Shown here in pieces: positions 33,262 to 54,758 of a stretch of DNA of 64,000 nucleotides; positions within the stretch are counted from its first letter, which is position 1; each line of letters starts with the position of its first letter. The stretch is from IMG/VR virus record IMGVR_UViG_3300042540_001822, positions 1 to 64,000 of that record, one strand, 5' to 3'. The position numbers and the translations under genes were made by a program. Below the pieces are notes generated by a model. That model saw only the letters and a program-made list of their open reading frames with translations. It had not been told where the DNA came from and searched no databases.

Positions 33262-33390
33262 AGGTTTAAAGTTTGTTTTTACAAATATACGAATAAGTTT
33301 TCAGATTTCCAAATTTTATCCACACAAATACATCATATTTCTAGTGTATAAGTGAAGAAAAACTGGACAAATAAACGAGTTATCGGAAAT

Positions 33391-33693
33391 TCATTTTTCT
33401 TCCGACTCCTGCTCCGAAGAAGGTTGTTGCTTTTCAAATTCTTCTCTGATTTTAGTTAATCTTGAAAACTCTGCTACCCAAGCATCTAATGTCATTCCAT
33501 TTACTGAAATGTTTTCAAGCCTGTCCCTACCATCACCATCCCAATCAATTACCACTTCTCTACTACTACCCATTTGCCCAAGACTTCGTAGTTTTGAAAA
33601 AAATTCTAATAGTGGCTTTACTGCATCATCTGAGCAGGTAAATGAAATGACATTTTGAAAAGCAATGTTTGGTGTTTTAAATTTTTGTTCCAT
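33391..33693 (-). CDS. cassette-borne protein
   Basis: MGSSR...DWDGDG; cassette 33379-33738. Confidence 0.7.
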   Translation of the reverse strand: MEQKFKTPNIAFQNVISFTCSDDAVKPLLEFFSKLRSLGQMGSSREVVIDWDGDGRDRLENISVNGMTLDAWVAEFSRLTKIREEFEKQQPSSEQESEEK

Positions 33694-33731
33694 TTTAAAT
33701 TAAGTTTATTACCCACGAAAAATGAACTATC

Positions 33732-33827
33732 CGATAACACGGGTTTGGCAAAATGCCACCAAATAGTTTGTGCCAAGATTGAAAGTTCGTGCAAGGTGGC
33801 ACTTCGCCAAGCCCGAAGCCGTTATGT
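33732..33827 (+). mobile_element. attC-like site f
   Basis: CGGGTTTGGCAAAATGCCACC/GGTGGCACTTCGCCAAGCCCG stem, 18 of 21 Watson-Crick pairs. Confidence 0.8.
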
Positions 33828-33834
33828 GTAATTG

Positions 33835-34152
33835 CTACATTCCGTACATTTGAAGAACTATATTCTTTGAACGACATAATTCAGCCCAAGCTTCTTGACA
33901 GTAATTTCTACCGTGTAATGCGTTATTAAATTCGTGACACAATTCAGTTACCAATGATTCAATGTCTTGTGTTAAATCAATTTGTGTTTCGTATTGGTAT
34001 CTTCCACGCAATATTCCATCCTCGTATAAGTGCAATTCACTTTTCGCTCTTGTTTCTAAATCTACATAGAATTGGTCTTTTTCGCTATTGTAGTGCATTG
34101 ATGTAGAAATTCCTTTCTTTGCCAACGCTTTCATTATGTCTTGTATTTCCAT
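33835..34152 (-). CDS. hypothetical protein
   Basis: Promoter at 34179; ends next to GTT 33821. Confidence 0.65.
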   Translation of the reverse strand: MEIQDIMKALAKKGISTSMHYNSEKDQFYVDLETRAKSELHLYEDGILRGRYQYETQIDLTQDIESLVTELCHEFNNALHGRNYCQEAWAELCRSKNIVLQMYGM

Positions 34153-34287
34153 TTTATTTTTGTTTACTGTTTGTTTTACAAATATACAAATAAATTTTTA
34201 GATTTACAAATTTTACCCCCCACAAATACATCATATTCCTGGTGTATAAGTGAAGGGAAACTGGACAAATAAACGAGTTATGTGCCA

Positions 34288-34488
34288 TTAAGAACCATAA
34301 CCGTTTTTAACCATTTTTTGACGAATTTGTTCAGCTATTTCTAACTTTATCTTTTCGTCTTGGTCATATCTTCCAACAAGGAAATTAAATGATTTTAACA
34401 TTGCAGTCCTTAACTCAAGTTGGTCATCATTTGGATATATTTTCCACATATATTCAACAAATTCGGCTTCGGTTTTACATAATTTCAT
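34288..34488 (-). CDS. cassette-borne small protein
   Basis: Cassette 34277-34513. Confidence 0.65.
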   Translation of the reverse strand: MKLCKTEAEFVEYMWKIYPNDDQLELRTAMLKSFNFLVGRYDQDEKIKLEIAEQIRQKMVKNGYGS

Positions 34489-34506
34489 GCTTCAAAAATT
34501 AACGGC

Positions 34507-34597
34507 ACATAACAAGGTATATGTGAAATACCTTATAAAGTTTCTACTAATTTTTAAGTTCGTCTTTAGGTACTTCACATATACCCAACTGTTATAT
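34507..34597 (+). mobile_element. attC-like site g
   Basis: TATATGTGAAATACCT/AGGTACTTCACATATA stem (one A.C mismatch). Confidence 0.8.
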
Positions 34598-34921
34598 TCA
34601 ATTTTCAATTTGTTTTGGAATTTCTACCCATTTATTATCAACCAATTTATATCGTGTTTCATAATCAAATGAAGTCTCGGAAGCATCATTATTAAAATAT
34701 AAAATATTTTCCATATCCCAACTACTTCTATAAAAGGTGTGTTCGTTATTTTCACAATGAATTACAGTGTTTCCGTCCATAACTATCATCGCATTTATAT
34801 GTGTTGAAAATAACTTACCCCCACATATCGGACATTTATGTTCATATTCATTTATATCACACCAATAATCACCCATTCTTTTTTGTTGGTATCTAAACCA
34901 TTCTAATTTTTCTTTTCCCAT
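34598..34921 (-). CDS. Zn-binding hypothetical protein
   Basis: CPICGG. Confidence 0.6.
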   Translation of the reverse strand: MGKEKLEWFRYQQKRMGDYWCDINEYEHKCPICGGKLFSTHINAMIVMDGNTVIHCENNEHTFYRSSWDMENILYFNNDASETSFDYETRYKLVDNKWVEIPKQIEN

Positions 34922-35008
34922 AATTTTATATTTTACTTACACAAATATATCATATTCTTGGTGTATGTGTGAAGGAAACCTGGACAAATAAACGAGTTAG
35001 CAGAAATA

Positions 35009-35278
35009 CTACTGAGCGTTACTAACAGGAATTGCATCTGCATCTAAATTATGGTCGTGTCTTTGCAGTTCAGAAACTAAATAGTTATCTCTAACAGACT
35101 TGTGAAATGGCTCAACATAACCTTCTTTTGCAAAATACCATTCGCCTTGATAGTTAAACTCAAAGCCACTATCTCGCATACAAATTGACATAGTTTCACC
35201 ACTTGCAGTTTTTAAAGTTAAACCGCTAAAAACTTCTTCTAATTGGATACCTAAATCCTCTGTTACTGTTACTTTCAT
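35009..35278 (-). CDS. cassette-borne protein
   Basis: Cassette 34996-35333. Confidence 0.65.
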   Translation of the reverse strand: MKVTVTEDLGIQLEEVFSGLTLKTASGETMSICMRDSGFEFNYQGEWYFAKEGYVEPFHKSVRDNYLVSELQRHDHNLDADAIPVSNAQ

Positions 35279-35326
35279 TTTGTTATTTATTTAAGTTAAA
35301 AATTCGTTTTAATTACACCGTACTTC

Positions 35327-35412
35327 TGCTAACAGCACATAAGCAAAAGCCCAAATCCAACCGCATAATGCCACCGCTATTTGTGCCTTCGCTTATCTGC
35401 AAACCGTTATAA
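35327..35412 (+). mobile_element. attC-like site h
   Basis: GCACATAAGCAAAAGC/GCCTTCGCTTATCTGC stem between TAAC and GTTA. Confidence 0.7.
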
Positions 35413-35427
35413 GTAATGAAACAAAAA

Positions 35428-35619
35428 TTATGAGTTTTCATTTTTCTTACTCCCATCTTCATTCCACTTCCTAAGAAATTCTTGATTTTCAGGTTTTGAA
35501 AGTTCTTCTTTCATCGCATCATCAAATTTCTTTTGCATTTCAAGATTTTGTTCCTCTGTCAGTGTATTCAAATCCTGAAAATCTTCTTTTGTTAATTTAC
35601 TTTTCATATTGTAAATCAT
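35428..35619 (-). CDS. hypothetical protein ending in NS*
   Basis: Shared 3' tail. Confidence 0.6.
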   Translation of the reverse strand: MIYNMKSKLTKEDFQDLNTLTEEQNLEMQKKFDDAMKEELSKPENQEFLRKWNEDGSKKNENS

Positions 35620-35696
35620 ATTGTAAAATTTTTGTTTTAAGTTTTGTGGTAAGGTACTTCACATATACCCAACCGTTATATTCAATATCAAAAATT

Positions 35697-35993
35697 TTAT
35701 GAGTTTTTATATTTTTCAACCCACTCATCATAAGATAGTCTATTTTCTACCAAATATCTTTTAGCAACCTTAGCGTTCCATTCTTTCATTTCTTCAAAAG
35801 TAACTCCTTTTATATACTTACTACAATTCAAATCAAATTTGTAATCTAACCCACCTTCCCACATCACTTCATAAAACACACTATCTTTATCGTGTCCAAT
35901 CGTTCCATTTATCTTATCAGACTGCATATCAACAAAAGCATCAGTTACTCTTTTCATATATGCTTCGTATTCTTTTTGAAATTCTTTTTTCAT
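35697..35993 (-). CDS. cassette-borne protein ending in NS*
   Basis: Cassette 35675-36023. Confidence 0.65.
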   Translation of the reverse strand: MKKEFQKEYEAYMKRVTDAFVDMQSDKINGTIGHDKDSVFYEVMWEGGLDYKFDLNCSKYIKGVTFEEMKEWNAKVAKRYLVENRLSYDEWVEKYKNS

Positions 35994-36035
35994 TTGTATA
36001 AAATTTTTGATACTAAATATAACAAAGAATATGTG

Positions 36036-36617
36036 TCATTGCCTTTCGTTCCAAACTGATTCTGCTTCATCAATAGTGTCAGACCACCAATCAAGTGAAT
36101 GTCCTTTTTGTTTACAATTCACCCTGTAATATTCTGTCATACTATCTCCAAAAGTCTTGTTTTCAATTTCCGTATCCGAACCACAAAAAGGACAAGGCAA
36201 CGCACACACAACAGCAGGTATATTCAATTGTGGGTTCTGTGGTTTATCCGAATTTTGTGTTTCTCTTGATGTGATTTCATTTAGTTCTTTGTATAATCCA
36301 TTATGCCAAGTTTTCATTTTATCTAAACAATCACTAATAACATCATCAATGTTTGTTTTATAAATTGAAACATCTTGTAATTCACCTTCTTTATATTCTT
36401 TTGTTGAAGGTAACATTTCAACAATATTATAAAACAAATCAATTGGTTTATTTTCCCAATTAAAAAAATTACCATCAAACTCACCATAACTTATTCTAAA
36501 TCCGCCACTAAGCAATCCGTGTGCGTATAATTTATAATTAACACCATCTACCATTAACATTTTTGGTAAATCTTTTTCACATCTTAACACGTGGTCTTTT
36601 TCTTCTTGTAATTCCAT
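36036..36617 (-). CDS. fusion of an unknown domain and a Lar-like (restriction alleviation) Zn finger, joined by an attC-derived linker
   Basis: PQLNIPAVVCALPCPFCG...WN; attC left-arm remnant at 36205-36240. Confidence 0.65.
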   Translation of the reverse strand: MELQEEKDHVLRCEKDLPKMLMVDGVNYKLYAHGLLSGGFRISYGEFDGNFFNWENKPIDLFYNIVEMLPSTKEYKEGELQDVSIYKTNIDDVISDCLDKMKTWHNGLYKELNEITSRETQNSDKPQNPQLNIPAVVCALPCPFCGSDTEIENKTFGDSMTEYYRVNCKQKGHSLDWWSDTIDEAESVWNERQ

Positions 36618-36618
36618 T

Positions 36619-36849
36619 TTATTTAGTTTTCAACATTTCTTTATAGGCATTACCTGTGCTAAATTGTTGTTCAAATGTTGGATTTGGATAATGTTCATTT
36701 TGAATCCAATTATCGTGATGTTCAAATGTTCTCCAACCATTATCACGTAATTCTTTTACCATATTCATTAACCCACTTCCAACTTTCATATCAGAAGGAA
36801 TTTCAATACCACCATCAGGTGTTACTTTTACAATAGTTTCTAATTTCAT
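36619..36849 (-). CDS. hypothetical protein
   Basis: ORF track. Confidence 0.6.
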   Translation of the reverse strand: MKLETIVKVTPDGGIEIPSDMKVGSGLMNMVKELRDNGWRTFEHHDNWIQNEHYPNPTFEQQFSTGNAYKEMLKTK

Positions 36850-36910
36850 AATTTATTTTTTTATAAATGAAGGAAAACTGGACAAATAAACGAGTTATAT
36901 TCAATAAAAA

Positions 36911-37090
36911 TTAATTTATGAGTTTATCTACATAATAGTTATCACCACCATAACCGTATTTAATTCTTGCTTGTTCAGCTTCTTCTTTTGTGTTATATGG
37001 TGCTAATATCACACCATTTTTCTCGTTTTGATGTGCTGGTTCTTTTTCATAAACCGCATAATACTCTTTTTTAAGTGCTTCGTATTTCAT
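36911..37090 (-). CDS. 59-aa cassette ORF (below the ORF-track cut-off)
   Basis: MKYEALKKEYY...DKLIN*; cassette 36894-37120. Confidence 0.6.
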   Translation of the reverse strand: MKYEALKKEYYAVYEKEPAHQNEKNGVILAPYNTKEEAEQARIKYGYGGDNYYVDKLIN

Positions 37091-37113
37091 ATGTATAAAT
37101 TAATTTTTACTAA

Positions 37114-37167
37114 ATATAACAAAGAATATGTGTCATTAAAACGAACACATATTCTCAATCGTTAGCG
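37114..37167 (+). mobile_element. attC-like site i (54 nt)
   Basis: Perfect GAATATGTGT/ACACATATTC stem with loop CATTAAAACGA. Confidence 0.8.
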
Positions 37168-37395
37168 GTAATTTTTACGAACATATCGTTCTACATATTT
37201 CCCGTAATCTTCCATCATTTCCCACCAAGTATCATTACTAATTAAGTTATCGGACAAATAATCTAATTTTGAACGACCATAAACTTTTACCACCCAACCA
37301 ATCGGGTCTAAAAAACTACCGCTAACACCAGATAAAAGCATTTTATTACTGCTAATATCTAACTTCTCTGCTTGTTTTTTACTTTTGTTTTTCAT
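37162..37395 (-). CDS. cassette-derived protein
   Basis: Leader …MLLSGVSGS; cassette 37161-37326. Confidence 0.65.
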   Translation of the reverse strand: MKNKSKKQAEKLDISSNKMLLSGVSGSFLDPIGWVVKVYGRSKLDYLSDNLISNDTWWEMMEDYGKYVERYVRKNYR

Positions 37396-37421
37396 ATTAA
37401 ATTATTGTTTATCATCAGTCG

Positions 37422-37667
37422 TTATAAAACATTTCCGAGAACGTTTCTTAGTTCGTCCTTATCTACGAATGAATTAAGAACAAAAATTTCTTTTCCTGTG
37501 TGATTTTTTTGAACAACATTATCGTTTATCCAAATATGTGCATTATAAATCTCAATTTCAGGTATTATTGTATATCTTGTAGGATATTTACCATCAGTCG
37601 TTTCGGTAATCAATATATTATGTTCACCAAAGAAATTTTTGTAAATCAGTTTTAATTTTGTTTTCAT
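37422..37667 (-). CDS. cassette-borne protein
   Basis: Stop in GTTA at 37421. Confidence 0.6.
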   Translation of the reverse strand: MKTKLKLIYKNFFGEHNILITETTDGKYPTRYTIIPEIEIYNAHIWINDNVVQKNHTGKEIFVLNSFVDKDELRNVLGNVL

Positions 37668-37736
37668 TTTATTTAGTTTTTAACATTTCGGTGTATGGAT
37701 GAAGAAAAACTGGACAAATAAACGAGTTAGCAACAA

Positions 37737-37946
37737 TTAGTGCTGACCATACCTCAAATGAATGTTATCATAATCAGTGTCATAATAAGCACCGTTTTCT
37801 TGCTTATGTTTCTTTATACATTGGTATAAATATATTTCGGTTAATCCAACCAAAGAACAATCACATTTATCCCAAACATTATACAGTTGTTTAATTTCGT
37901 CATCATTCAAATCTAATAAACTTTCTATTGTGTTCTTTTCATTCAT
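37737..37946 (-). CDS. hypothetical protein
   Basis: Follows attI-like junction 37726. Confidence 0.55.
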   Translation of the reverse strand: MNEKNTIESLLDLNDDEIKQLYNVWDKCDCSLVGLTEIYLYQCIKKHKQENGAYYDTDYDNIHLRYGQH

Positions 37947-38190
37947 AAATCAACGTTTTATATCAAGGTATAAATTCAATTAAATATTTTTACTATCTCT
38001 CTAACCTTATCAATCAAAAAATTAGTTTCTTCAATATGATGTTGTTCCAATCTTTTATACCTTTCTTCCCAAGTCAATGTATCATCATCCTTGTATTTTT
38101 TGATTTTAATCCACTTGTATGTTTCAAGTATTTCTTTCTTTTCTAATTCTTCCATAATAAAATATTTAATTAGATTTATACTAAGGAATA

Positions 38191-38409
38191 TTATTTTTGT
38201 TTTGAGAATGTTGATATAACACTATCAATAACTTCTTCTTTACTACCAATATCCCACCAATCTGGATTTTGTTTTAGTTTATACTCTGGATTATCGTTAT
38301 GATAAGTTTCTACCAACCCATCAACTAATCCATTCCACGAAATATTGTTCTGTTCTAAAACTGAAACAATCTCCGCATATTTAATCATTTTTTCTACTAT
38401 TTCTTCCAT
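38191..38409 (-). CDS. hypothetical protein
   Basis: ORF track. Confidence 0.55.
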   Translation of the reverse strand: MEEIVEKMIKYAEIVSVLEQNNISWNGLVDGLVETYHNDNPEYKLKQNPDWWDIGSKEEVIDSVISTFSKQK

Positions 38410-38549
38410 AATTTATATTTTTTAATAAGTTTCATATAACAAGGTGTATGGGAAATTTTTTATCAAATATACATCATATTCCTGATGTATGGATGAAGGA
38501 AACCTGGACAAATAAACGAGTTATAGCCAATACTACCGAAGTACTTCGA

Positions 38550-38978
38550 TTAAGCATTTAGTGGCTCATCAAAGATTACATTCCAACTATCTAATGGTTG
38601 CCAACCGCCACCCATAGTCATTACTTCTAAATCTGATGATGGTATATTTTTGAACGTAATATATTCGTCACCTTTATTATTTACTATTCTTGGTGATAGT
38701 TGAAAATCATCAGTCAATTTTGTTCTCAAAACACACATTTTACTAATCCCACCTTTTGATTTAGCATAGTATTTAGCATAATCTAAATCGTTTGTAAAAC
38801 TAATTGATGGTTGTTCTTCACCAGTTCTATTTGGTTTCATATATCCATCGTACTGTATATTCATTGCTTGTCCTTTACCTGTTCCATGATAAATATAATC
38901 ATCTTGTTTTATATCTTCATTTACAAATTGATTGAATGATTTAACCTCATCAATCATATCTCGTATTTCTTTACTCAT
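38550..38978 (-). CDS. ADP-ribosyltransferase-like protein with CTS-like N-terminus
   Basis: YIYHGT...PSISFTNDLDYAKYYA; N-terminus …KSFNQFVNE. Confidence 0.55.
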   Translation of the reverse strand: MSKEIRDMIDEVKSFNQFVNEDIKQDDYIYHGTGKGQAMNIQYDGYMKPNRTGEEQPSISFTNDLDYAKYYAKSKGGISKMCVLRTKLTDDFQLSPRIVNNKGDEYITFKNIPSSDLEVMTMGGGWQPLDSWNVIFDEPLNA

Positions 38979-39091
38979 TTTGTTTATGTTTATATAAAAA
39001 TATTTCTATGTTTCTACAAAAATACATCATATTCCTGGTGTATAAGTGAAAGAAAACTGGACAAATAAACGAGTTATAGATAATAAAATAT

Positions 39092-39340
39092 CTATTTAAT
39101 CTTAGTTCCTTTTGGAACAAATTTCTTCAAATCTTTTTTCAATTGTTTATCTACTGATTTAGAGTATTCTTCATCATTTTCAATCATCCAAGTATGAAGT
39201 TGAAGAAATTCTTTTTCTGATAGAGTTTCACCATCTAATTTACGTTGAATAAGTTTAGATATTTTACTATCTATAAAATCAGATATATTCAAGTTTTCTT
39301 GATGTTCGTTGAAACTTTGTATGTGTTTATTACCTTTCAT
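39092..39340 (-). CDS. hypothetical protein with CTS-like N-terminus
   Basis: KHIQSFNE; AATATATA at 39360-39367. Confidence 0.6.
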   Translation of the reverse strand: MKGNKHIQSFNEHQENLNISDFIDSKISKLIQRKLDGETLSEKEFLQLHTWMIENDEEYSKSVDKQLKKDLKKFVPKGTKIK

Positions 39341-39382
39341 CTTCGTAAATTGTTTTTAGTATATATTAAAAAGAAAACCTAA

Positions 39383-39436
39383 ATACAACAAATGAGAAAC
39401 AACATTAAAACGATTGTTTATCACACGACGTTGGCA
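39383..39436 (+). mobile_element. attC-like site j (54 nt)
   Basis: CAAC-AAATGAGAAACAA-CATTAAAACGA-TTGTTTATCACACGAC-GTTGGCA. Confidence 0.7.
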
Positions 39437-39720
39437 ACCACCTCTGTTGGAATTATTGTAAAATCCACCACTCTATACACACCATTTTCGTCTTCAAAAG
39501 AAATCTTACCAAATGTTTGTCCATTTTTAGTTTCCGAATCAGATACGTTAGTTTCAAACTTCAAATTTGAGTTTAATCGATCTTGTAAAATTTCTTTCAA
39601 ATCATCTACTGGTCCAAATAAGTTTTCTTCTATGAAAGACTTTACCTCGACTTCCACCAACATTCCTCTGTGACTTCTGTTTTCTATTTTCATCATGATT
39701 TTGGGTTTTAATTTGTGCAC
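39421..39720 (-). CDS. hypothetical protein whose C-terminus reads into attC j
   Basis: Ends …EVVANVV*; -7 box at 39742. Confidence 0.55.
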   Translation of the reverse strand: MHKLKPKIMMKIENRSHRGMLVEVEVKSFIEENLFGPVDDLKEILQDRLNSNLKFETNVSDSETKNGQTFGKISFEDENGVYRVVDFTIIPTEVVANVV

Positions 39721-39789
39721 CTTAGTTTATGGTTTGTTTTACAAATATACAAATAGGTTTTTTATTTAGTCTATATAAATATTCAAAAA

Positions 39790-40284
39790 TTAAAATCCCC
39801 CGCCGCCCCCTTTAAAATTAGGAACTAAATTGTATTTGATCCTATTATCATTCAGCATTTTTTGGACATCATCAAACTTATGATCATTTTTAAGATGTTC
39901 TAAAATGTCAATTTGTATAATGTAATCAAATATTGGAAAAGTTTCTTTGTTGGTAAAAATTCGTTCTTCCGATTGTGATTTATTAAATTTAAAGTAGGTG
40001 ACTGGTTTTATAACAAAACGATTTGATATTTTATCCCCGTCTAACATTATCCTGATACCACCCCATGTAAGAGATTTGTTTCTTGTACAGGAAACACTAT
40101 AATCGTAATTATATTTAGGCAAGTCATTATATCTTGTCAGAAATGTTTTGCTTTCTAATATAAAATATAAATTCATAAGATGGGTGAAATGGTATATTAT
40201 TCCTTCATTTTTTGATTCCTCTAAATGATCCTTCATCAAGAAGTTTTTAAACTTGTCAATGTGTTGTCTCATTTCTTTACTCAT
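39790..40284 (-). CDS. ART-like protein (DarT/DUF4433-like YHFT motif) with CTS-like N-terminus
   Basis: IIYHFTHLMNLYFILES...SVSCTR; AATATATA at 40296-40303. Confidence 0.5.
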   Translation of the reverse strand: MSKEMRQHIDKFKNFLMKDHLEESKNEGIIYHFTHLMNLYFILESKTFLTRYNDLPKYNYDYSVSCTRNKSLTWGGIRIMLDGDKISNRFVIKPVTYFKFNKSQSEERIFTNKETFPIFDYIIQIDILEHLKNDHKFDDVQKMLNDNRIKYNLVPNFKGGGGGF

Positions 40285-49521: not shown

Positions 49522-49619
49522 ATGTGGTTGGTTTATGTCGTAAAGATACGACATTTTTACTAAGAATAAAACCAAAACCCCGAAAAGTTTTTCCCCAATT
49601 TATGGGGCTAAGTAAATTG

Positions 49620-49693
49620 TGATTCCACTAGGACTCGAACCTAGGACCTACAAATTATGAGTTTGCAGCTCTAACCAACTGAGCTATGGAATC
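49620..49693 (-). tRNA. tRNA with CAT anticodon (elongator Met or Ile2)
   Basis: Canonical cloverleaf GATTCCA/TGGAATC, loop CTCATAA, TTCGAGT; CCA not encoded. Confidence 0.92.
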
Positions 49694-50000
49694 TTTGGGT
49701 AAATTCTGTTTACGGTTTGTAGGGGTTTGTAAACAAAATTATGGTGGGTTGTTTAATTCATTTTTTTGATTTCCTCTATTAACTGAATAAACATGGATTT
49801 TGTTATATGTTCTTGTTTAACCCACATATAAATTATGCCCATCCTTTCATGGTAATCTTTTTTAGTTTGTAATTTTTCAATGAGTTCCTTTATCATTTAA
49901 CTATTTGTTTTTTCTTCTTTTGACCCGCCCGCGTTCGACGTATGTTAGTAATATACTATGTTAAAAAGTAACACCTAGCCGTTGTCTGTTTCGGAACGTG

Positions 50001-50098
50001 TAGTCAGGACAGGATTCGAACCTGCACACCTCAGTGTTTTATAGTTCATCAACTATGCGTTTCCCAAATGATATGTCTACCAATTTCGCCACCTGACT
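50001..50098 (-). ncRNA. AGTCAGG-family tRNA-like element 1
   Basis: AGTCAGG…GCAGGTTCGAATCCTGTCCTGACTA; Leu-type D loop; no canonical anticodon arm. Confidence 0.8.
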
Positions 50099-50201
50099 AT
50101 TTGTTTAACGATACGGTATTACATTATTTTCAATACACCATAAGTAATACTCTCTGTTGTCAATGTAATAATCTTTCATTGTTTCTATTTTTAATTGTTA
50201 G

Positions 50202-50333
50202 TAGTCAGGACAGGACTCGAACCTGTGCCTTGAGACTGACCCCTTGCTGACCTTTAGGTATCCACATCCTACCAGACTTGATGTGATATTTCTTTATCTG
50301 GGGAGCTGCTCTAACCAACTGAGCTACCTGACT
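50202..50333 (-). ncRNA. AGTCAGG-family tRNA-like element 2 (132 nt)
   Basis: Class-I D arm GCTCAGTTGGTTAGAGC; long insert. Confidence 0.8.
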
Positions 50334-50338
50334 GTGTT

Positions 50339-50536
50339 TTATTCCTCAATATATGTCCACTTTTTAATATCTTTCTCATCACAATAATCATCATATGATG
50401 GAAGATACCACTCACCATTTTTATAATAACACACCTCAAACTTTGGTGTGTTTTTTAATGATGTCCGAATCAAAACCCAACTATTATCTTTGGGAGGTAT
50501 TTTGTCTTTTTTGAAATCTATCCAATTCATATCCAT
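50339..50536 (-). CDS. DUF551-like small protein
   Basis: MNWID...PP...W motif. Confidence 0.6.
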   Translation of the reverse strand: MDMNWIDFKKDKIPPKDNSWVLIRTSLKNTPKFEVCYYKNGEWYLPSYDDYCDEKDIKKWTYIEE

Positions 50537-50538
50537 AC

Positions 50539-50745
50539 TTAAGAATTAAACAATCTTTTATATTCACTTTCACAAGTATCTCGTTTGTTTAATGGGTGAA
50601 CGTCATTCCACTCACCTATATCAACACATTTGACATCTTTTACCTTGGGGTAAATGTAACTAGTGTTTTCAATTAATTGTGTAATTTCTTGTTCACCGAC
50701 ATTTTTTATATCAATAACCAGTAATTCTACTTTATATGCTTTCAT
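50539..50745 (-). CDS. hypothetical protein
   Basis: DIGEWNDVHPLN motif. Confidence 0.65.
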   Translation of the reverse strand: MKAYKVELLVIDIKNVGEQEITQLIENTSYIYPKVKDVKCVDIGEWNDVHPLNKRDTCESEYKRLFNS

Positions 50746-50759
50746 ATTTTTATTTTTAG

Positions 50760-50892
50760 CAGTCAGGACAGGATTCGAACCTGTGGTGCAAGTTATTAGG
50801 TGAAGTAATACTCTTCATTCATCAGACTGAGCTGAACCTCTCATTACCTTGCCGACTTGTAGTAGTTGCGTCTGCCATTCCGCCACATGACT
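50760..50892 (-). ncRNA. AGTCAGG-family tRNA-like element 3 (133 nt)
   Basis: G73; insert with GCAAG/CTTGC and GTAAT/ATTAC stems. Confidence 0.8.
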
Positions 50893-51022
50893 ATTTTATT
50901 TTTTTATGCTGTCAACATTCTTATTACAACACCTAACAATACTGAGTAAATCATTGCGGTAATTGCAAAACCAATCATTATACCATCAAAATATGTTTTT
51001 TCCTTTTTCATAACTTTAAATT

Positions 51023-51232
51023 TTAGGATTTCTGTCTTATCCAAACCTCACCACATTTTTCACACTCTTGTCGGTCTTTAAAATTTCGTACATCATGCTC
51101 GCAAACCGATTTCATAACAGCAGATTGGCGTAATACTTTGGCATACTCATCGGCAAAGTTAAGTGCCATTTCTAAAGTCCAGTGTCTCGTTTCAATCATT
51201 CGAGTTGATTTGTAATATTCTTTTGCTGTCAT
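51023..51232 (-). CDS. hypothetical protein
   Basis: Contains …QSAVMKSVCEH...CEKCG. Confidence 0.55.
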   Translation of the reverse strand: MTAKEYYKSTRMIETRHWTLEMALNFADEYAKVLRQSAVMKSVCEHDVRNFKDRQECEKCGEVWIRQKS

Positions 51233-51421
51233 AACCTTTATTTATGAACTGTGAGGTATTGACTTATCCTTTTGAATTACTTCTAGTGTATCTAGCTGTT
51301 CTTTCAAAGATTTAAGTTCTGTGTGACAAATTAATAACTGCCTTTCCTTTTCTTTAATATGCAATTTTACATCGTAAATTGCTTTCTCAATTTTATTCAT
51401 TGTGTTAATTAAAAATTTTAG

Positions 51422-51515
51422 TAGTCAGACAGGGTTCGAACCTGTATGTCAGCTTTACATTTCGTTGACTGACCGCACCTTGAAGCGAGCGTCTATCCAA
51501 TTCCGCCACTTGACT
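51422..51515 (-). pseudogene. AGTCAGG-family element 4: tRNA-Leu-like with an 8-nt anticodon loop
   Basis: CGC-TTCAAGGT-GCG; 1-nt deletion in the acceptor 3' strand; long variable arm. Confidence 0.7.
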
Positions 51516-51521
51516 ATTTAT

Positions 51522-51737
51522 TTAAGTAAGCAAATCCCCACACTTTAGTATATCCCCAACCATTTTCTTGGTACCATTTTCATCAGTAATAGAATTTAGT
51601 TGATAGTGTTTTCCACTGTTGATTGCATCAGCAGTTAAAAGGAATAATGCTTGGATAAATCCATTACAATAAGCAGTCAATTCATATGTGTGTCCATTAC
51701 TGCTTTTAAATAAGCCTATGTACTTGTTATGTTTCAC
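51522..51737 (-). CDS. hypothetical protein
   Basis: Promoter at 51757. Confidence 0.6.
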   Translation of the reverse strand: MKHNKYIGLFKSSNGHTYELTAYCNGFIQALFLLTADAINSGKHYQLNSITDENGTKKMVGDILKCGDLLT

Positions 51738-51869
51738 TGTATTTATTTTATTAAGACAAATATACTATTGAAATGAGATTAGAAAAAATGAAACCCCAGG
51801 CCAAAAGACCTGGGGCTTGAAAGGGACCCAACCACAGATCCCTTTCGGGAGGGGGACTTTGGACTCCTA

Positions 51870-52220
51870 TTAGTCTTCCCCCTCCTGGTCCATTTCTTTT
51901 TTACGTTCAAGACCCCCAAACAAACCCCCCATCATTTTCTGAATTTCTTCTCGTTTGTTTTCGAATCCTGCGTGGATTTTTCCAACAAAATAACCTGCCA
52001 GAAGAAGTTTCTTTTCGTAACGTGTTAGGGAACCAGGAACATCCAGTTCCTCGGAACGAACAAAGTTACCACAGTCAAGAATGGTGTCAGAAACTGAATC
52101 ACATTTCTTAAAGGAATTCACACATTCCTTAGCCAATGAATCGAAACAGGAATCTGATAAACTGAGACCTCCGGAGATAGTTTTTGGGTAGAATGGTGCG
52201 TCATGCGGATGATTTGACAT
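51870..52220 (-). CDS. hypothetical protein, paralog of 41197
   Basis: MSNHPHDAP...TRYEKKLLLAGYF...MDQEGED. Confidence 0.75.
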   Translation of the reverse strand: MSNHPHDAPFYPKTISGGLSLSDSCFDSLAKECVNSFKKCDSVSDTILDCGNFVRSEELDVPGSLTRYEKKLLLAGYFVGKIHAGFENKREEIQKMMGGLFGGLERKKEMDQEGED

Positions 52221-52320
52221 AAAATAAGGGTTTAAAGGTTAATGATGTAAAGGTAAGATAAAATTTAGTGAAAAAAAAATGGAACCCCGATTTTATAAAA
52301 TAAATTTGAAATTGTTTTAG

Positions 52321-52407
52321 TAGTCAGGACAGGATTCGAACCTGTGTTCAGGGACTCAAAGTAAGTAACCCTCTGAGTTTGAATGGCAATCTTTTCGCCA
52401 CCTGACT
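52321..52407 (-). ncRNA. AGTCAGG-family tRNA-like element 5
   Basis: Long ACTCAGAG/CTTTGAGT hairpin replaces the anticodon arm. Confidence 0.8.
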
Positions 52408-52471
52408 ATTTGTAATTTTGGCTTTTCATTTAGTATCCACAGAGCCCAAATTACTAAAATGAACTGTGCTG

Positions 52472-52593
52472 TAGTCAGGACAGGATTCGAACCTGTGACA
52501 TTGCAACCCTTATACTTCCCGCGTCCTAATGATTATGAACCGTGTTGTTTTCGGGATGTGATAAACCTCTTTCACATTACGCAATACCTGACT
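52472..52593 (-). ncRNA. AGTCAGG-family tRNA-like element 6
   Basis: No D arm; ATGTGA/TCACAT and TCCCG/CGGGA stems. Confidence 0.75.
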
Positions 52594-52596
52594 ATG

Positions 52597-52806
52597 TTTC
52601 CCCACCCTGAGATTTGGGGTGAGTAGTCATTCTGGTTTTTTCCTATTGATAAAACCTACAGGGCATCCCCTATTAAAACAGTCACACTACGAAGGAGGGG
52701 CTGTGAGTGGCACCTTTAGCCCTAAGAACCGGCATTCCGCTGTCCGATTTAAGCGAGTCCATTGTTTAAGTCTTGAACCAAAGACTCTGAGTATCTCTTA
52801 CTCATT
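52597..52806 (-). ncRNA. candidate structured ncRNA
   Basis: Non-coding; hairpins at 52603-52621, 52769-52786, 52788-52804. Confidence 0.45.
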
Positions 52807-52807
52807 G

Positions 52808-52928
52808 CAGTCAGGACAGGACTCGAACCCGTGGAGAACGGCTTGATAGTTTCTGCGCGAGGGCTACTTAATTCGCCACCCCTCAATCCTTGTTCTCAAT
52901 TACGCTGCGGAACCACCGCCACCTGACT
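52808..52928 (-). ncRNA. AGTCAGG-family tRNA-like element 7
   Basis: G73; GCGG/CCGC D hairpin; GAGAAC/GTTCTC and GAGGG/CCCTC stems. Confidence 0.8.
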
Positions 52929-53089
52929 ATATTTAAAGTAACCCAACTCAGAGGGGTATTTGTTACATTATCACAGCTTTTGCAAAGTACTCTGGTTAAT
53001 TACTCCGTCTGTACCCAACTGCTTTATGTTGGCTTATAGCTGGCTATTTTAATGCAACTCACAACTTTATTTGTTGGAATTACTTTTTG

Positions 53090-53170
53090 TAGTCAGGGCA
53101 GGACTCGAACCTGCGGGAACTGTTTTGCCACGTAGGACTTATGTAGGCTCCACCATTTTGCCACCTGACT
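53090..53170 (-). ncRNA. AGTCAGG-family tRNA-like element 8 (81 nt)
   Basis: Perfect acceptor and T arm; non-canonical middle. Confidence 0.75.
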
Positions 53171-53340
53171 GTGTGTACCGTTCCTATCTACTTTATGAAC
53201 ATACGGTACCAGATGCTTCATCATGACCTTCGGATAGGTAAGTTTTGAGGATGAGAAGACCTCTGTGTTGTAAGTTGCCTACCATAAATGGTATCCTTTA
53301 GCATCTACTCAAGCAATTCCTTTCTCAAGGGAACAACACT
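53171..53340 (-). ncRNA. candidate structured ncRNA
   Basis: Stems GTACCGT/ACGGTAC, GTGTTG/CAACAC, TACCAT/ATGGTA. Confidence 0.5.
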
Positions 53341-53342
53341 AG

Positions 53343-53463
53343 CAGTAAGGACAGGCTTCGAACCTGTAAGGTCTCCATGACAGAGCCTATGGTGTGATTA
53401 CGCTCACTCATCTTAGGGATGCGAACCCATTCCAATACCGTTTACCAATTTCGGCACCTAACT
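53343..53463 (-). ncRNA. AGTCAGG-family tRNA-like element 9
   Basis: AGTTAGG/CCTTACT acceptor, CCG/CGG D stem, G73. Confidence 0.75.
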
Positions 53464-53975
53464 AAAAAAGAAGGTTCTGGATCGTACCTGGACCAATCAG
53501 GAGAACCTTCAAATTGTATATAAAAGGTCATTTATAATCCTACCTATATTTCCAAGATCCTTTGGAATATAGTAACCATCCAAGGTAGGCCTATACTCTG
53601 GCACTCCGTCTGTACTTGTTGGCCTAATCAATGTGTCATAGGTTTTCAGATACAGCGTTCAGTGTTACCCTCAGGACTTCTTCATCCTGCCCCCAAAGTT
53701 ACGTGGGAACCTCACTTAGAAGTTTAAGTGTGTATCGTAGAATTGTCCAGTATTTCTACGACTTGTGGATTACAACACGACCAATTAAGGCCCCTTACCC
53801 TCTCAATCCATAATGAGGGACTCATTTATTCTCGTTCCCGACGTAACCTACTGAATACCTTCTGTGGTTATACGAATTTCACTTTTGTGTATCTTTCACC
53901 CATAGCCACGAAGACTTCCAGTCGTGGATCACACACCATAACGGATGAGTACTTCCGTTAATTGTGGGCTCTTTT
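53464..53975 (-). ncRNA. candidate large structured ncRNA (about 500 nt)
   Basis: At least 7 clear stems; no plausible minus-strand ORF in the track. Confidence 0.5.
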
Positions 53976-54072
53976 GTTGATTAATAAGGATTCGAACCTT
54001 AATCCTCCAGCCCTGTAGCGTTTCGTGTTCCCGAACCTACCGGGGCCAGTGTGCCCATTACACTATAATCAA
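53976..54072 (-). ncRNA. tRNA-like element with a 29-nt structured anticodon loop
   Basis: TTGATTA/TAATCAA acceptor, GTGT/ACAC D stem, GGCCC/GGGCT stem, TAAGG-TTCGAAT-CCTTA. Confidence 0.65.
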
Positions 54073-54122
54073 TCGAGAGTTTCGAACCTCTCAGGTACCA
54101 AGGTAATTAATCTTGGACTTTG

Positions 54123-54262
54123 CAATCGGTGTGAGAATCGAACTCACTCAAAAGGACGGTTCCTTTATCAGTTACACAAAGTAATTACTCCTTGCTTTAC
54201 CTGCCGTGTAACGTTTTGTGGCCACTCCGCGTTACCAAATGTCAACCAAAGACATACCAATT
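54123..54262 (-). ncRNA. tRNA-like element (140 nt)
   Basis: AATTGGT/ACCGATT acceptor, GTGAG-TTCGATT-CTCAC T arm; 5' boundary uncertain. Confidence 0.5.
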
Positions 54263-54340
54263 CCGCTGTCTTCCCAGCTGTGTGGGTTTAGTATTGACTT
54301 ACCCGTCAATGACGAGCTCTTGCCCCAAACCAAGGCTAGG

Positions 54341-54436
54341 TAGTCAGGACAGGAATCGAACCTGTGAGTATAGGATTAGCGCTTAGCCTATACACATCTT
54401 ATTTCTAGAGTGCGTCTACCACTCCGCCACCTGACC
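54341..54436 (-). ncRNA. AGTCAGG-family tRNA-like element 10
   Basis: Leu-type D arm, 7-bp GTATAGG/CCTATAC variable arm, collapsed anticodon stem. Confidence 0.8.
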
Positions 54437-54655
54437 AAATAAAGGGACTGGTTACCCCTTAAGTACCGTTTTCCCGGTTGACGATCTTTCTGTTCACACC
54501 ATGCCACTTTTTTTAGGCATTACAGTGACTGGTTGTTCCCTACTCCAACTACCAGAAAGATCTCGTTGAAAGCAAGGCCGGGTCTAAAAATGGAAAGCAA
54601 TAACTTTCCAAATGAACCATTTTCCATTTTCAGTCTCCCGACTGAAGATGATGAT
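54437..54655 (-). ncRNA. candidate structured ncRNA
   Basis: 10-bp GATCTTTCTG/CAGAAAGATC; TGGAAAG/CTTTCCA; TTCAGTC/GACTGAA. Confidence 0.5.
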
Positions 54656-54687
54656 TTTTCCAAAATGTCAAAGAACAAAATCTTTAG

Positions 54688-54758
54688 TAGCGGGTGGGGG
54701 TAACGCTCCCCCTACACACCTTGGGTTATGAGCCCAGGCTGCTACTAAGCTACCCGCA
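54688..54758 (-). tRNA. divergent initiator-like tRNA(CAT)
   Basis: 1-72 mismatch, GGG/CCC in the anticodon stem, loop CTCATAA; T loop AGCGTTA and reduced D arm. Confidence 0.6.

What the first reader, a model, noticed from the sequence alone, without database searches (positions are those of the whole stretch)
50001..54436. Array of ten tRNA-scaffold RNAs with constant ends and unrelated structured inserts
Ten minus-strand elements of 81-133 nt share the acceptor AGTCAGG/CCTGACT (minor variants) and a (A/G)CAGG-TTCGA-CCTG(T/C) T arm. Their D arms are of different tRNA classes or absent, and the anticodon region is replaced by unrelated, self-pairing inserts of about 30-90 nt. Seven have A73 and three G73; all are followed by C but none encodes CCA. 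Keeping the ends while the middles diverge argues against simple decay. Options: RNase P/Z punctuation signals that release neighbouring ncRNAs and mRNAs; anticodon-less decoys for tRNA-targeting defences; substrates for LeuRS or SerRS, which do not read the anticodon; or a tRNA-framed guide/cargo RNA library.
Basis: partly seen in the sequence, partly recalled or inferred. Interest (0 to 1): 0.9.

Follow-up and report, generated by a model that had tools for sequence, protein, structure and literature searches.

The report
Phage tRNA-shell RNAs with swappable inserts
A large uncultured phage carries ten genes for RNAs that keep the two ends and elbow of a leucine tRNA but replace the decoding middle with unrelated sequences. 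The same constant shell, with well over a hundred different middles, occurs in at least 120 other phage contigs, apparently an undescribed natural version of the "tRNA scaffold" that engineers use to express RNAs.

Summary
Ten minus-strand elements of 81-133 nt lie at exactly the stated coordinates. They share an AGUCAGG/CCUGACU acceptor stem and an ACAGG-UUCGAnU-CCUGU T arm, are followed by N73-C74, and encode no CCA. They are not decoding tRNAs, intron-containing tRNAs or decaying pseudogenes.

The same shell occurs in at least 120 IMG/VR phage contigs, usually inside real tRNA gene arrays and always co-oriented with them. It shares the U(-1) and C74 flanks of the canonical tRNA genes. It is absent from 50,697 GenBank phage records. 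Among bacterial and archaeal genomes it appears only on 23 MAG contigs, 12 of them binned as Bacteroidota.

The shell derives from tRNA-Leu. The middles are hyperdiverse: 165 sequence clusters in the sample. Individual insert types are nonetheless conserved, with compensatory changes, across phages whose flanks are unrelated. Near-identical phages carry different inserts at the same site, so inserts are exchanged by recombination within the constant arms.

Best reading: these are tRNA-framed stable non-coding RNAs, released by the tRNA-processing machinery, that display exchangeable payloads. The payload targets are unknown, and no expression data exist. A conserved, unannotated ~500-nt structured RNA lies in the same island.

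The parts
54341..54436 (-). Element e1 (96 nt). G1-U72 acceptor variant, Leu-type D arm, A73-C74.
   Evidence: R1 55.4 bits. Rfam tRNA 38.8 bits with a 27-nt skip. The payload recurs in 4 other viral contigs, with a compensated stem change.
53343..53463 (-). Element e2 (121 nt). Acceptor AGUUAGG/CCUUACU with a U4-U69 mismatch, G73-C74. It directly follows an intrinsic terminator.
   Evidence: R1 39.7 bits. Its payload homologue in L078 is about 85-90% identical.
53090..53170 (-). Element e3 (81 nt), A73-C74.
   Evidence: R1 62.8 bits. Rfam tRNA 30.4 bits. No payload homologue was found outside its own contig.
52808..52928 (-). Element e4 (121 nt), remodelled D arm, G73-C74.
   Evidence: R1 40.2 bits. 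The payload is 98.6% identical to L032 although the flanks are unrelated at 62-66%.
52472..52593 (-). Element e5 (122 nt), the long form of a widespread payload type. A central helix encloses a D-like hairpin and an optional 40-nt sub-domain.
   Evidence: R1 48.7 bits. There are 22 distinct relatives in 29 viral contigs. The consensus structure has 24 pairs, 100% of cells are paired, 5 pairs have double changes, and 0/500 shuffles reach this.
52321..52407 (-). Element e6 (87 nt), with a stable 8-bp payload hairpin, A73-C74.
   Evidence: R1 58.7 bits. Fold z-score -3.8. Partial payload match in L179.
51422..51515 (-). Element e7 (94 nt), the least remodelled copy. It keeps a Leu(CAA)-like loop and a long variable-arm hairpin. 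Its acceptor is damaged (A6 plus a 1-nt deletion).
   Evidence: R1 48.5 bits. Rfam 20.4 bits, below threshold. The L011 homologue is 91% identical, has an intact acceptor and shows a compensated hairpin change.
50760..50892 (-). Element e8 (133 nt), U6-C67 mismatch, G73-C74.
   Evidence: R1 44.6 bits. The payload is 85-88% identical to L011.
50202..50333 (-). Element e9 (132 nt), class-I D arm identical to that of the neighbouring tRNA-Met, A73-C74.
   Evidence: R1 47.3 bits. Rfam tRNA 46.1 bits with a 76-nt skip. No payload relative by exact 21-mer.
50001..50098 (-). Element e10 (98 nt), insertion in the D region, A73-C74.
   Evidence: R1 64 bits. Rfam tRNA 35.3 bits.
54123..54262 (-). Eleventh tRNA-like element, with a divergent shell: acceptor AAUUGGU/ACCGAUU, T stem GUGAG/CUCAC, G73-C74. 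It carries the same payload that sits in an AGUCAGG shell in L071.
   Evidence: Alignment with L071 and L011. In L011 the shell is AGUCGGU/ACCGACU with GCAAG/CUUGC. The acceptor and T stems are fully compensated across the three versions.
53978..54070 (-). Weak tRNA-like element with another acceptor (UGAUUAU/UUAAUCA), A73-C74. It lies immediately upstream of the large ncRNA.
   Evidence: R1 16.1 bits, E 0.11. Read from the sequence.
53465..53975 (-). Conserved, roughly 500-nt structured ncRNA that ends in an intrinsic terminator. It belongs to the same non-coding island and is flanked by tRNA-like elements.
   Evidence: No Rfam hit. A 17-mer from it occurs in 38 viral contigs. The consensus has 83 pairs, 40 with compensatory changes. 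Family shells lie at recurrent offsets.
49619..49693 (-). Genuine tRNA-Met(CAU) at the downstream end of the array, on the same strand.
   Evidence: ARAGORN. Rfam 71.2 bits.
52586..52807 (-). Conserved non-coding spacer module between e4 and e5.
   Evidence: 86% identical to L011. Also matches L075 and L099. No ORF of 60 aa or more.

Best explanation
The elements are genes for tRNA-Leu-derived chimeric non-coding RNAs. Each keeps a constant 'shell': the 7-bp acceptor stem, T arm, U8, usually a G18G19-bearing D loop, an A15/U48 pair, and N73-C74. The anticodon arm and variable region, and sometimes the D loop, are replaced by a payload of about 30-130 nt.

Steps shown here from sequence:
- The elements sit in the same orientation as canonical phage tRNA genes, usually among them.
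- They share those genes' flanking signature (U at -1, C74, no encoded CCA).
- They almost never have their own terminator.
- They cannot decode.
- Their payload types are conserved, with compensatory changes, across unrelated genomic contexts.
- Payloads are exchanged between phages, with breakpoints inside the constant arms.

Inferred steps:
- The elements are transcribed within polycistronic tRNA/early transcripts.
- RNase P cuts them out at the 5' end, and the host 3'-end pathway plus the CCA-adding enzyme finishes the 3' end.
- The tRNA shell gives them tRNA-like stability.
- That excision also frees neighbouring mRNAs and ncRNAs.
- The payload is the functional part. It acts by binding or titrating host or phage factors, and anti-defence is the leading guess, given the turnover and the position in accessory tRNA islands.

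At the DNA level, the two roughly 25-bp constant arms serve as portable homology. This lets payloads move through a shared phage gene pool and keeps the arms uniform.
For: **Identity and extent**
- ten elements, none expected by chance.
- at least 120 viral contigs, many with 2-7 copies.
- the elements are interspersed with high-scoring canonical tRNAs in related phages.
- co-oriented with each other in 82/82 cases and with canonical tRNAs in 73/73. The Bacteroidota -7 box TAnnTTTG occurs 19 times at -20 to -11, against 1.5 expected.

**Processing signals**
- U(-1) 80%, A73 91%, C74 98%, U8 97%, A14/A15 about 88%, U48 80%.
- canonical tRNAs in the same loci have U(-1) in 70% and C74 in 212/215, and only 15 encode CCA.
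- 29% start within 30 nt of an upstream stop codon, 33% end within 40 nt of the next start codon, and 2% have a terminator.

**Not decoding**
- anticodon-type hairpins number 9, against 9.8 +/- 2.8 in shuffles.

**Origin**
- the D-arm region is closest to the phages' own tRNA-Leu.

**Payload diversity and conservation**
- 165 payload clusters.
- the same payload is 77-100% identical in flanks that are about 60-70% identical, which is unrelated.
- the e5-type structure is 100% paired with 5 double-change pairs, and 0/500 shuffles reach it.
- e1-type compensation.
- the same payload occurs in three shells whose stems are fully compensated.

**Exchange**
- L011 and L044 have flanks 99.6-100% identical, but their 130-nt and 80-nt elements share only the first ~10 and last ~25 nt of the shell.
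- one orthologous site carries five different payloads.
- in 40 flank-matched comparisons the site was never empty.
- module order is shuffled between the window and L011.
Against: - No transcript, end-mapping, CCA or charging data exist, and no cultured phage carries the family.
- Thermodynamic support for payload folding is weak. The mean z-score is -0.85 over 185 payloads, and most window elements are above -1.5.
- Three of the ten window copies have acceptor defects, so some may be decaying.
- Three window payloads have no relative outside their own contig among the loci in hand (e3, e9 and e10). For e9 an exact 21-mer scan of the viral collection also found none.
- The cross-phage constancy of the arms is partly ascertainment, because the loci were fetched by an exact 3' motif. 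Divergent shells exist.
- No conserved partner protein was found next to the elements.
- High payload identity across unrelated flanks could reflect very recent transfer rather than selection.
Confidence: 0.55

Rival explanations
1. The elements are processing and recombination signals only. The shell acts as an RNase P/Z 'punctuation' signal, like plant-mitochondrial t-elements, that separates mRNAs and ncRNAs. As a repeated sequence it also mediates modular shuffling, like PeSL cassettes in T4-type phages. The middles are functionally neutral filler that merely has to avoid misfolding the shell.
For: - Elements abut ORFs and the large ncRNA, and only 2% have terminators.
- They share flanks with canonical tRNA genes.
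- Module order is shuffled and swaps occur at the arms.
- There is a precedent for repeated regulatory cassettes driving shuffling (PMC2839356, PMC4122927).
- Folding z-scores are weak.
Against: - Neutral filler should drift and shrink. Instead, payload types stay 77-100% identical in unrelated flanks, and they change by compensation.
- Many payloads are long (up to about 130 nt).
- In the window, six elements lie in a 2.1-kb stretch with no ORFs to punctuate.
Confidence: 0.2
2. The elements are decoys or inhibitors for host nucleases or toxins that attack tRNAs. The shell is bound as if it were a class II tRNA, and the altered middle resists or traps the enzyme.
For: - Phage tRNA arrays are known counter-defence loci, and defences cut anticodon or variable loops (PMC10264068, PMC13096335).
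- The shell is tRNA-Leu-like, that is class II.
- Payload turnover is rapid.
- The phage encodes a PNKP-type phosphatase domain typical of tRNA repair.
Against: - Anticodon-like hairpins occur only at chance level.
- No bacterial genome carries a tRNA with this 3' motif.
- One universal shell cannot mimic many different tRNAs.
- The PNKP gene lies 46 kb away.
Confidence: 0.12
3. The elements are non-decoding but aminoacylated tRNA-Leu mimics. LeuRS, which does not read the anticodon, charges them. The Leu-RNA then titrates LeuRS or EF-Tu, or donates leucine to a non-ribosomal transferase.
For: - Leu-type D arm, A15/U48, G18G19, U72 and A73 in 91% of copies.
- C74 and the tRNA-like 3' context.
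Against: - 7% of copies, and 3 of the 10 in the window, have G73.
- Several elements have class-I, remodelled or interrupted D arms (e9, e5, e4, L030, L099).
- The hypothesis does not explain payload diversity or conservation.
- No transferase or LeuRS gene was seen.
Confidence: 0.08
4. The elements are selfish MITE-like mobile DNA with 7-bp terminal inverted repeats that happens to look like a tRNA.
For: - The same element occurs in unrelated flanks.
- There are many copies per genome.
- Homing endonuclease genes occur nearby in some loci, and the window has two HNH genes.
Against: - There were no empty sites in 40 flank-matched comparisons. The site always held another element, which indicates replacement rather than insertion.
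- No target-site duplication is seen, and the flanks equal those of ordinary tRNA genes.
- tRNA tertiary positions are conserved, and the stems are compensated in divergent shells.
- The elements are strictly co-oriented with tRNAs.
Confidence: 0.07
5. The elements are neutral pseudogene decay of duplicated tRNA genes, or tRNA genes interrupted by introns that are spliced to give normal tRNAs.
For: - Three window copies have acceptor lesions.
- e7 looks like a slightly degraded tRNA-Leu(CAA).
- ARAGORN in intron mode can force a call on 112 of 157 elements.
Against: - Decay would hit the ends as much as the middles.
- Payloads are conserved with compensation.
- The intron-mode anticodons are scattered and include many A34 types.
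- No conserved anticodon-arm 'exon' borders the inserts.
- The inserts are too short for group I introns, and there is no Rfam intron hit.
Confidence: 0.04

Closest known systems
Engineered 'tRNA scaffold' for recombinant RNA expression (Ponchon-Dardel approach; described in PMC3753655)
   Same: The anticodon arm of a tRNA is replaced by an arbitrary structured RNA. The acceptor, T and D shell recruits tRNA processing and protects the chimera.
   Different: The scaffold is a laboratory design. Here the arrangement is natural, phage-borne, multi-copy and Leu-derived, and its payloads are exchanged by recombination. Processing here is inferred, not shown.
Murine gammaherpesvirus 68 TMERs (tRNA-miRNA-encoded RNAs; PMC4838037)
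   Same: A viral array of non-aminoacylated tRNA-like units whose tRNA part drives the expression and processing of attached small RNAs.
   Different: TMERs belong to a eukaryotic virus, use Pol III promoters inside the tRNA, and carry the payload (pre-miRNA hairpins) downstream of the tRNA-like unit rather than inside it. There is no homology.
tmRNA tRNA-like domain
   Same: The acceptor stem and T arm are retained, and the anticodon region is replaced by a large insertion closed by a helix. The e5-type has exactly this three-way topology.
   Different: There is no G3-U70, no tag reading frame and no pseudoknot ring, and the elements are 80-130 nt. ARAGORN finds no tmRNA.
Stable RNAs C and D (species 1 and 2) in the phage T4 tRNA gene cluster (from my own knowledge, not checked here)
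   Same: Non-tRNA stable RNAs encoded among phage tRNA genes and matured with them. Their function is still unknown.
   Different: T4 has two unique RNAs, not a family with a constant shell and exchangeable middles. No sequences were compared.
Plant-mitochondrial t-elements and the mitochondrial tRNA punctuation model (from my own knowledge)
   Same: Acceptor/T-arm mimics are used as RNase P/Z cleavage signals that define the ends of neighbouring transcripts.
   Different: t-elements have no conserved payload and no constant sequence across genomes.
PeSL mobile regulatory cassettes of T4-type phages (PMC2839356, PMC4122927)
   Same: Short conserved repeats in hyperplastic regions act as homology for modular shuffling between phages.
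   Different: PeSLs are promoter-terminator composites that flank ORFs. Here the repeats are the two arms of an RNA gene, and the exchanged unit lies between the arms.
Bacterial Y-RNA-like YrlA tRNA mimics (PMC4201824)
   Same: Modular ncRNAs with a tRNA-like domain, sometimes phage-encoded.
   Different: In YrlA the tRNA-like part is internal and the termini form the Ro-binding stem. There is no Rfam YrlA hit and no Rsr gene here.

Membership tests
Canonical (decoding) tRNA | 7-bp acceptor stem, 5-bp T stem, and a T loop with the UUCRAnY consensus | tested here: met
   Seven of ten have a perfect acceptor and three have one lesion.
Canonical (decoding) tRNA | Anticodon arm: 5-bp stem and 7-nt loop with U33 and R37 | tested here: not met
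   ARAGORN calls none of the ten. Across 215 family members there are 9 such hairpins, against 9.8 +/- 2.8 in shuffles.
Canonical (decoding) tRNA | Reaches the Rfam RF00005 gathering score | tested here: inconclusive
   Five of ten reach 29 bits, but only by skipping 24-76 nt. One scores 20.4 bits and four give no hit.
Intron-containing tRNA (group I or protein-spliced) | Conserved exon halves that rebuild an anticodon arm, and an intron with a group I core or bulge-helix-bulge | tested here: not met
   Intron-mode anticodons are scattered. There is no consensus at the insert borders, no Rfam intron hit, and the inserts are 30-130 nt.
tmRNA | G3-U70 alanine identity, a tag reading frame with a resume codon, and pseudoknots | tested here: not met
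   No tmRNA by ARAGORN or Rfam. Pair 3-70 is U-A.
tRNA-Leu (as a LeuRS substrate) | A73, class II D arm with G18G19, and an A15-U48 tertiary pair (E. coli rules, from my own knowledge) | tested here: inconclusive
   Consensus: A73 91%, A15 88%, U48 80%, and the D arm is closest to phage tRNA-Leu. However, 3 of 10 window copies have G73 and several have non-Leu D arms. Charging cannot be tested in silico.
YrlA / Y RNA-like | Ro-binding terminal stem, internal tRNA-like module, and linkage to rsr | tested here: not met
   No Rfam hit at E<=5. No Ro/TROVE domain among the window proteins scanned.
MITE-like transposable element | Terminal inverted repeats, target-site duplication, and empty sites in relatives | tested here: not met
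   Only the 7-bp acceptor acts as an inverted repeat. There is no duplication, and 0 of 40 flank-matched sites was empty.
PeSL-type shuffling cassette | A repeated conserved sequence at the boundaries of swapped modules | tested here: met
   Breakpoints lie inside the constant arms in L011 vs L044 and at a six-phage orthologous site. Module order is shuffled.
PeSL-type shuffling cassette | Composite early promoter plus terminator stem-loop | tested here: not met
   A terminator-like site follows 2% of elements. A Bacteroidota-type -7 box precedes about 9%.
Known large phage ncRNAs near tRNAs (GOLLD, ROOL), considered for the ~500-nt neighbour | Match to the Rfam models | tested here: not met
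   No hit at gathering or at E<=5.

The most novel reading that the evidence does not exclude
Phages of freshwater Bacteroidota maintain a communal, recombination-shuffled library of hundreds of structured RNA payloads, each displayed in one standard tRNA-Leu-derived shell. The host's own tRNA maturation enzymes excise and stabilise each chimera. The payloads would form an RNA-based accessory arsenal of aptamer-like decoys or sponges for defence proteins, toxins or signalling nucleotides, or regulators of host RNAs. This would be the RNA counterpart of hypervariable anti-defence protein islands, and a natural invention of the tRNA-scaffold expression trick.
Probability: 0.35. Interest if true: 0.92.

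Novelty: new variant of a known kind. Interest (0 to 1): 0.8.

Why it matters
If the reading holds, this is a widespread and so far unannotated class of phage non-coding RNA. It is missing from Rfam except as partial tRNA hits. It is missing from all 50,697 GenBank phage records searched, and from the literature I could search.

It would matter in four ways:
- It shows that nature uses a tRNA shell as a general-purpose cassette for expressing, processing and stabilising RNA.
- The same shell doubles as portable homology for horizontal exchange of RNA modules.
- It offers hundreds of compact, evolution-tested structured RNAs whose targets could reveal new phage-host conflicts. These RNAs could also be used directly as scaffolded aptamers.
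- It warns annotators that 'pseudo' or undetermined tRNA calls in phage tRNA arrays may be functional chimeras.

Tried and rejected
- **Intron-containing tRNAs.** ARAGORN intron mode gives scattered, implausible anticodons. Rejected.
- **Host tRNA mimicry or an attP-type tRNA 3' end.** The 23-nt motif is absent from 185,579 species genomes except for 23 MAG contigs. Rejected as exact-sequence mimicry.
- **Known RNA families.** Rfam at gathering and at E<=5 gives only tRNA, plus noise hits (C/D-box sR60 and sR3, FMN, and a Plastid-ycf2 hit antisense to tRNA-Met).
- **Cultured relatives.** None found.
- **A conserved neighbouring protein partner.** Clustering 2,270 ORFs from the loci gave terminase, portal-sized, DUF932, VRR-NUC, ParB, metallophosphatase, GIY-YIG and methylase families. 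None occurred in more than 16 of 143 loci, and none was RNA-specific. The e5-type lies just downstream of a DUF932 gene in about 6 of 30 loci, but not in the window.
- **Antisense or guide hypothesis.** Payloads searched against all masked loci gave only hits to further, unmasked elements or modules.
- **A shared payload motif.** k-mer enrichment found only displaced D-arm pieces, which reflect D-loop insertions.
- **Thermodynamic stability as evidence of structure.** Weak.
- **Literature.** Six searches returned analogues but no description of this family. A 2026 preprint on bacterial tRNA mimics concerns different RNAs.
- **Not done.** I did not use the metagenome-contig scan, the protein homology searches or structure prediction, because no protein hypothesis emerged that they could test.

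Full report
**1. The observation**

Reading the minus strand of 49800-54700 shows the repeated ends directly. The shared 23-nt 3' motif (T arm plus the acceptor 3' strand) occurs nine times in the 64-kb window. All nine are on the minus strand between 50002 and 54364, and none is expected in shuffles. A tenth copy at 51422-51515 has a one-base deletion.

A covariance model (R1) was built from 49 relatives in other contigs plus one window copy. The next best hit is the true tRNA-Met(CAU) of 49619-49693, at 22.8 bits.

ARAGORN finds only that tRNA-Met. The Rfam tRNA model reaches its gathering score for five of the ten, but only by jumping over 24-76 nt where the anticodon arm should be.

The ten middles are unrelated to one another apart from D-arm remnants.

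Two corrections are needed:
- Three copies (e2, e7, e8) carry a lesion in the acceptor stem.
- Thermodynamic evidence that the middles are 'self-pairing' is weak, and only 52321-52407 stands out with z = -3.8.

**2. The genome**

The window is phage-like. Genes are almost all on the minus strand. They include a lysozyme, a GH16 domain, virion and baseplate families, a RecA/DnaB-like ATPase, two HNH endonucleases, a PNKP-type phosphatase domain (3482-3943) and DUF932 (7455-8207).

Loci L153 and L191, from IMG/VR contig UViG_3300042540_001822 (219,475 bp), match the window elements at 100%. The source is therefore, or is identical to, a jumbo phage contig. No GenBank phage resembles the region.

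**3. The family outside the window**

Many contigs have 2-7 copies. In nearly all, the complementary AGUCAGG lies 53-210 nt upstream.

By contrast, one genome for each of 185,579 bacterial and archaeal species holds the motif on only 23 contigs. All are MAG contigs, mostly from lakes, and 12 are binned as Bacteroidota. None of 50,697 GenBank phage records holds it.

The shell is therefore phage-specific and does not copy a host tRNA's sequence. The likely hosts are freshwater Bacteroidota. This fits the enrichment of the Bacteroidota -7 promoter box TAnnTTTG at -20 to -11 of the elements, seen 19 times against 1.5 expected.

**4. They are handled like tRNA genes but cannot decode**

In related phages the elements are interspersed with high-scoring canonical tRNAs. 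All 82 neighbouring element pairs are co-oriented, and so are all 73 element/canonical-tRNA pairs within 2 kb.

The unbiased positions of the profile show a tRNA core:
- U8 97%
- A14 and A15 about 88%
- a GG in the D loop
- U48 80%
- U(-1) 80%
- A73 91%
- C74 98%

The canonical tRNA genes of the same loci have the same flanks. U(-1) occurs in 70% and C74 in 212 of 215, and CCA is encoded in only 15. Only 2% of elements are followed by a terminator-like site. About 30% abut an ORF on either side. Release therefore has to be endonucleolytic, by inference RNase P at the 5' end and the host's 3' pathway plus CCA addition.

Decoding is excluded. Anticodon-type hairpins occur at the chance rate, 9 against 9.8 +/- 2.8. 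ARAGORN's intron mode yields scattered anticodons, including many A34 types. Three 70-nt members (L020, L053, L082) do look like real tRNA-Lys(UUU) in this shell.

**5. Origin**

The segment from position 8 to 26 is most like the phages' own tRNA-Leu, with a mean score of 8.2 against at most 4.3 for any other isotype. Those tRNA-Leu genes also have U72 and A73. Element e7 and its L011 homologue still show a Leu(CAA)-like loop and a long variable-arm hairpin.

The shell is a remodelled class II tRNA-Leu. In some relatives the insertion sits in the D loop instead (L030, L099, L207).

**6. The middles are hyperdiverse yet individually conserved**

Among about 190 elements of at least 80 nt, the payloads fall into 165 sequence clusters. 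Where a payload recurs, it is 77-100% identical, while the 200-nt flanks are no more alike than unrelated AT-rich DNA at about 60-70%. For example, window e4 and L032 are 98.6% identical in the payload and 62-66% in the flanks.

Differences tend to be compensatory:
- **e5-type** (window 52472-52593). It has 22 distinct sequences in 29 contigs, in a short (80 nt) and a long (121 nt) form. The 24-pair consensus is 100% paired over 527 cells and has five pairs with double changes. None of 500 shuffles, and no slid register, reaches this.
- **e1-type.** It recurs in four other contigs with a G-C to U-A exchange in its hairpin.
- **A payload in three shells.** The payload that sits in an AGUCAGG shell in L071 sits in an AGUCGGU/ACCGACU shell with a GCAAG/CUUGC T stem in L011. 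In the window (54123-54262) it sits in an AAUUGGU/ACCGAUU shell with GUGAG/CUCAC. The stems are fully compensated, and each version is still followed by N73-C74. This shows selection on the RNA fold of the shell. It also shows that the cross-phage constancy of the arms is partly a product of how the loci were fetched.

**7. Cassette exchange**

L011 and L044 are 99.6-100% identical over 250 nt on both sides of one element. They even share a rare acceptor variant. Yet the interior is a 130-nt element in one and an unrelated 80-nt element in the other, and they share only the first 10 and last 25 nt.

Two orthologous sites show the same pattern:
- L021, L030, L074, L094, L101 and L109, with flanks 83-95% identical, carry five different payloads.
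- The site upstream of a terminase gene in L034, L039, L070 and L095 carries three.

In 40 flank-matched comparisons the site was never empty. The process is therefore replacement by recombination in the constant arms, not transposition. The order of modules differs between the window and its closest relative, L011.

**8. Interpretation**

Together these results support a tRNA-framed ncRNA. Its shell recruits tRNA processing, by inference, and gives an L-shaped stable body. Its payload is the selected, exchangeable part. Its constant arms double as recombination homology. Excision necessarily also trims neighbouring RNAs, so 'punctuation' is a by-product, or a second function, rather than an alternative.

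What the payloads do is not shown. Three features resemble anti-defence islands: rapid turnover, very large diversity, and placement in tRNA arrays, which are known counter-defence loci (PMC10264068, PMC13096335). I rank this as the leading guess. A search for antisense targets within about 1.2 Mb of related phage DNA found nothing. No common payload motif exists, and no partner protein is consistently adjacent.

**9. Comparison with known systems**

The system works like the engineered tRNA scaffold (PMC3753655). More loosely, it works like the herpesviral TMERs (PMC4838037), the tmRNA tRNA-like domain, mitochondrial t-elements and, at the DNA level, PeSL cassettes (PMC2839356, PMC4122927). 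It is a member of none of these (see the membership table). Six literature searches and Rfam 15 gave no description of the family.

**10. Caveats**

- Everything about transcription, processing, CCA addition and charging is inferred from sequence.
- The loci were ascertained by exact motifs.
- Some window copies may be decaying.
- High payload identity could partly reflect recent transfer.

**11. Side finding**

The 2.1-kb ORF-free island (about 52300-54440) also holds a ~500-nt RNA at 53465-53975. It ends in a terminator, has no Rfam match and recurs in 38 viral contigs. Its consensus has 83 pairs, 40 of them with compensatory changes. Family shells lie at recurrent offsets on either side of it.

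Noticed in passing
window 53465-53975 (-): A conserved ~500-nt structured ncRNA that ends in an intrinsic terminator and has no Rfam match. A 17-mer from it occurs in 38 IMG/VR contigs. RNAalifold on 27 sequences gives 83 pairs, 40 with compensatory changes. tRNA-like shells sit at recurrent offsets (-236, and +312 to +373). It looks like a new large phage ncRNA family.
   Followed up: partly
window 54123-54262 (-) and 53978-54070 (-): Two further tRNA-like elements have different acceptor sequences but the same N73-C74 context. The first carries the payload found in an AGUCAGG shell in L071, with fully compensated stems.
   Followed up: partly
window 54126-54340, 53174-53339, 52586-52807 (-): The 'spacers' between elements are themselves conserved at 70-98% in other phages (L011, L050, L025, L032, L075, L099) and contain no ORFs. 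They may be further ncRNA modules.
   Followed up: no
window 26337-26430 (-): An isolated weak tRNA-like hit (R1 21 bits, E 0.006) with a UUCGAAU T loop, lying in the low-GC early-gene region far from the array.
   Followed up: no
window 3482-3943 (-): A 154-aa ORF is a PNKP-type HAD phosphatase domain (E 1e-32) without an attached kinase domain. Such enzymes repair nuclease-cut tRNAs, which hints that the host attacks tRNAs.
   Followed up: partly
window 7455-8207 (-); L002, L144, L145, L159, L166: A DUF932 gene is present. In about six other phages an e5-type element lies 17-130 nt downstream of a DUF932 gene on the same strand. In the window the two are 45 kb apart.
   Followed up: partly
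window 25000-40000: A 15-kb stretch of very low GC (27-31%) is packed with some 50 small minus-strand ORFs of 55-140 aa, separated by 50-150 nt gaps. It looks like a hyperplastic early region.
   Followed up: no
L153, L191: These loci, from IMG/VR UViG_3300042540_001822 (219,475 bp), are 100% identical to the window over all ten elements. The window evidently comes from this jumbo-phage contig or an identical one.
   Followed up: partly
L030 484-642; L099 4212-4391; L207 about 3155-3320: In some relatives an extra hairpin is inserted inside the D loop, between GGCGGAAU and GGUAGACGC. The shell therefore tolerates payloads at two sites.
   Followed up: no
L020 2845-2915, L053 13031-13101, L082 4078-4148: Three 70-nt members have the AGUCAGG shell but a proper anticodon arm (UUU, Lys), and they score as good tRNAs. 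A real tRNA core can therefore also sit in the shell.
   Followed up: no
window 49619-49693 (+): Rfam 'Plastid-ycf2 5'UTR' scores 52.8 bits on the strand opposite the tRNA-Met. This is below its gathering score and is an artefact of that model resembling an antisense tRNA.
   Followed up: yes
upstream of elements in 216 loci: The Bacteroidota-type -7 promoter box TAnnTTTG is enriched at -20 to -11 (19 observed, 1.5 expected). This supports Bacteroidota hosts and suggests that some elements start their own transcripts.
   Followed up: partly
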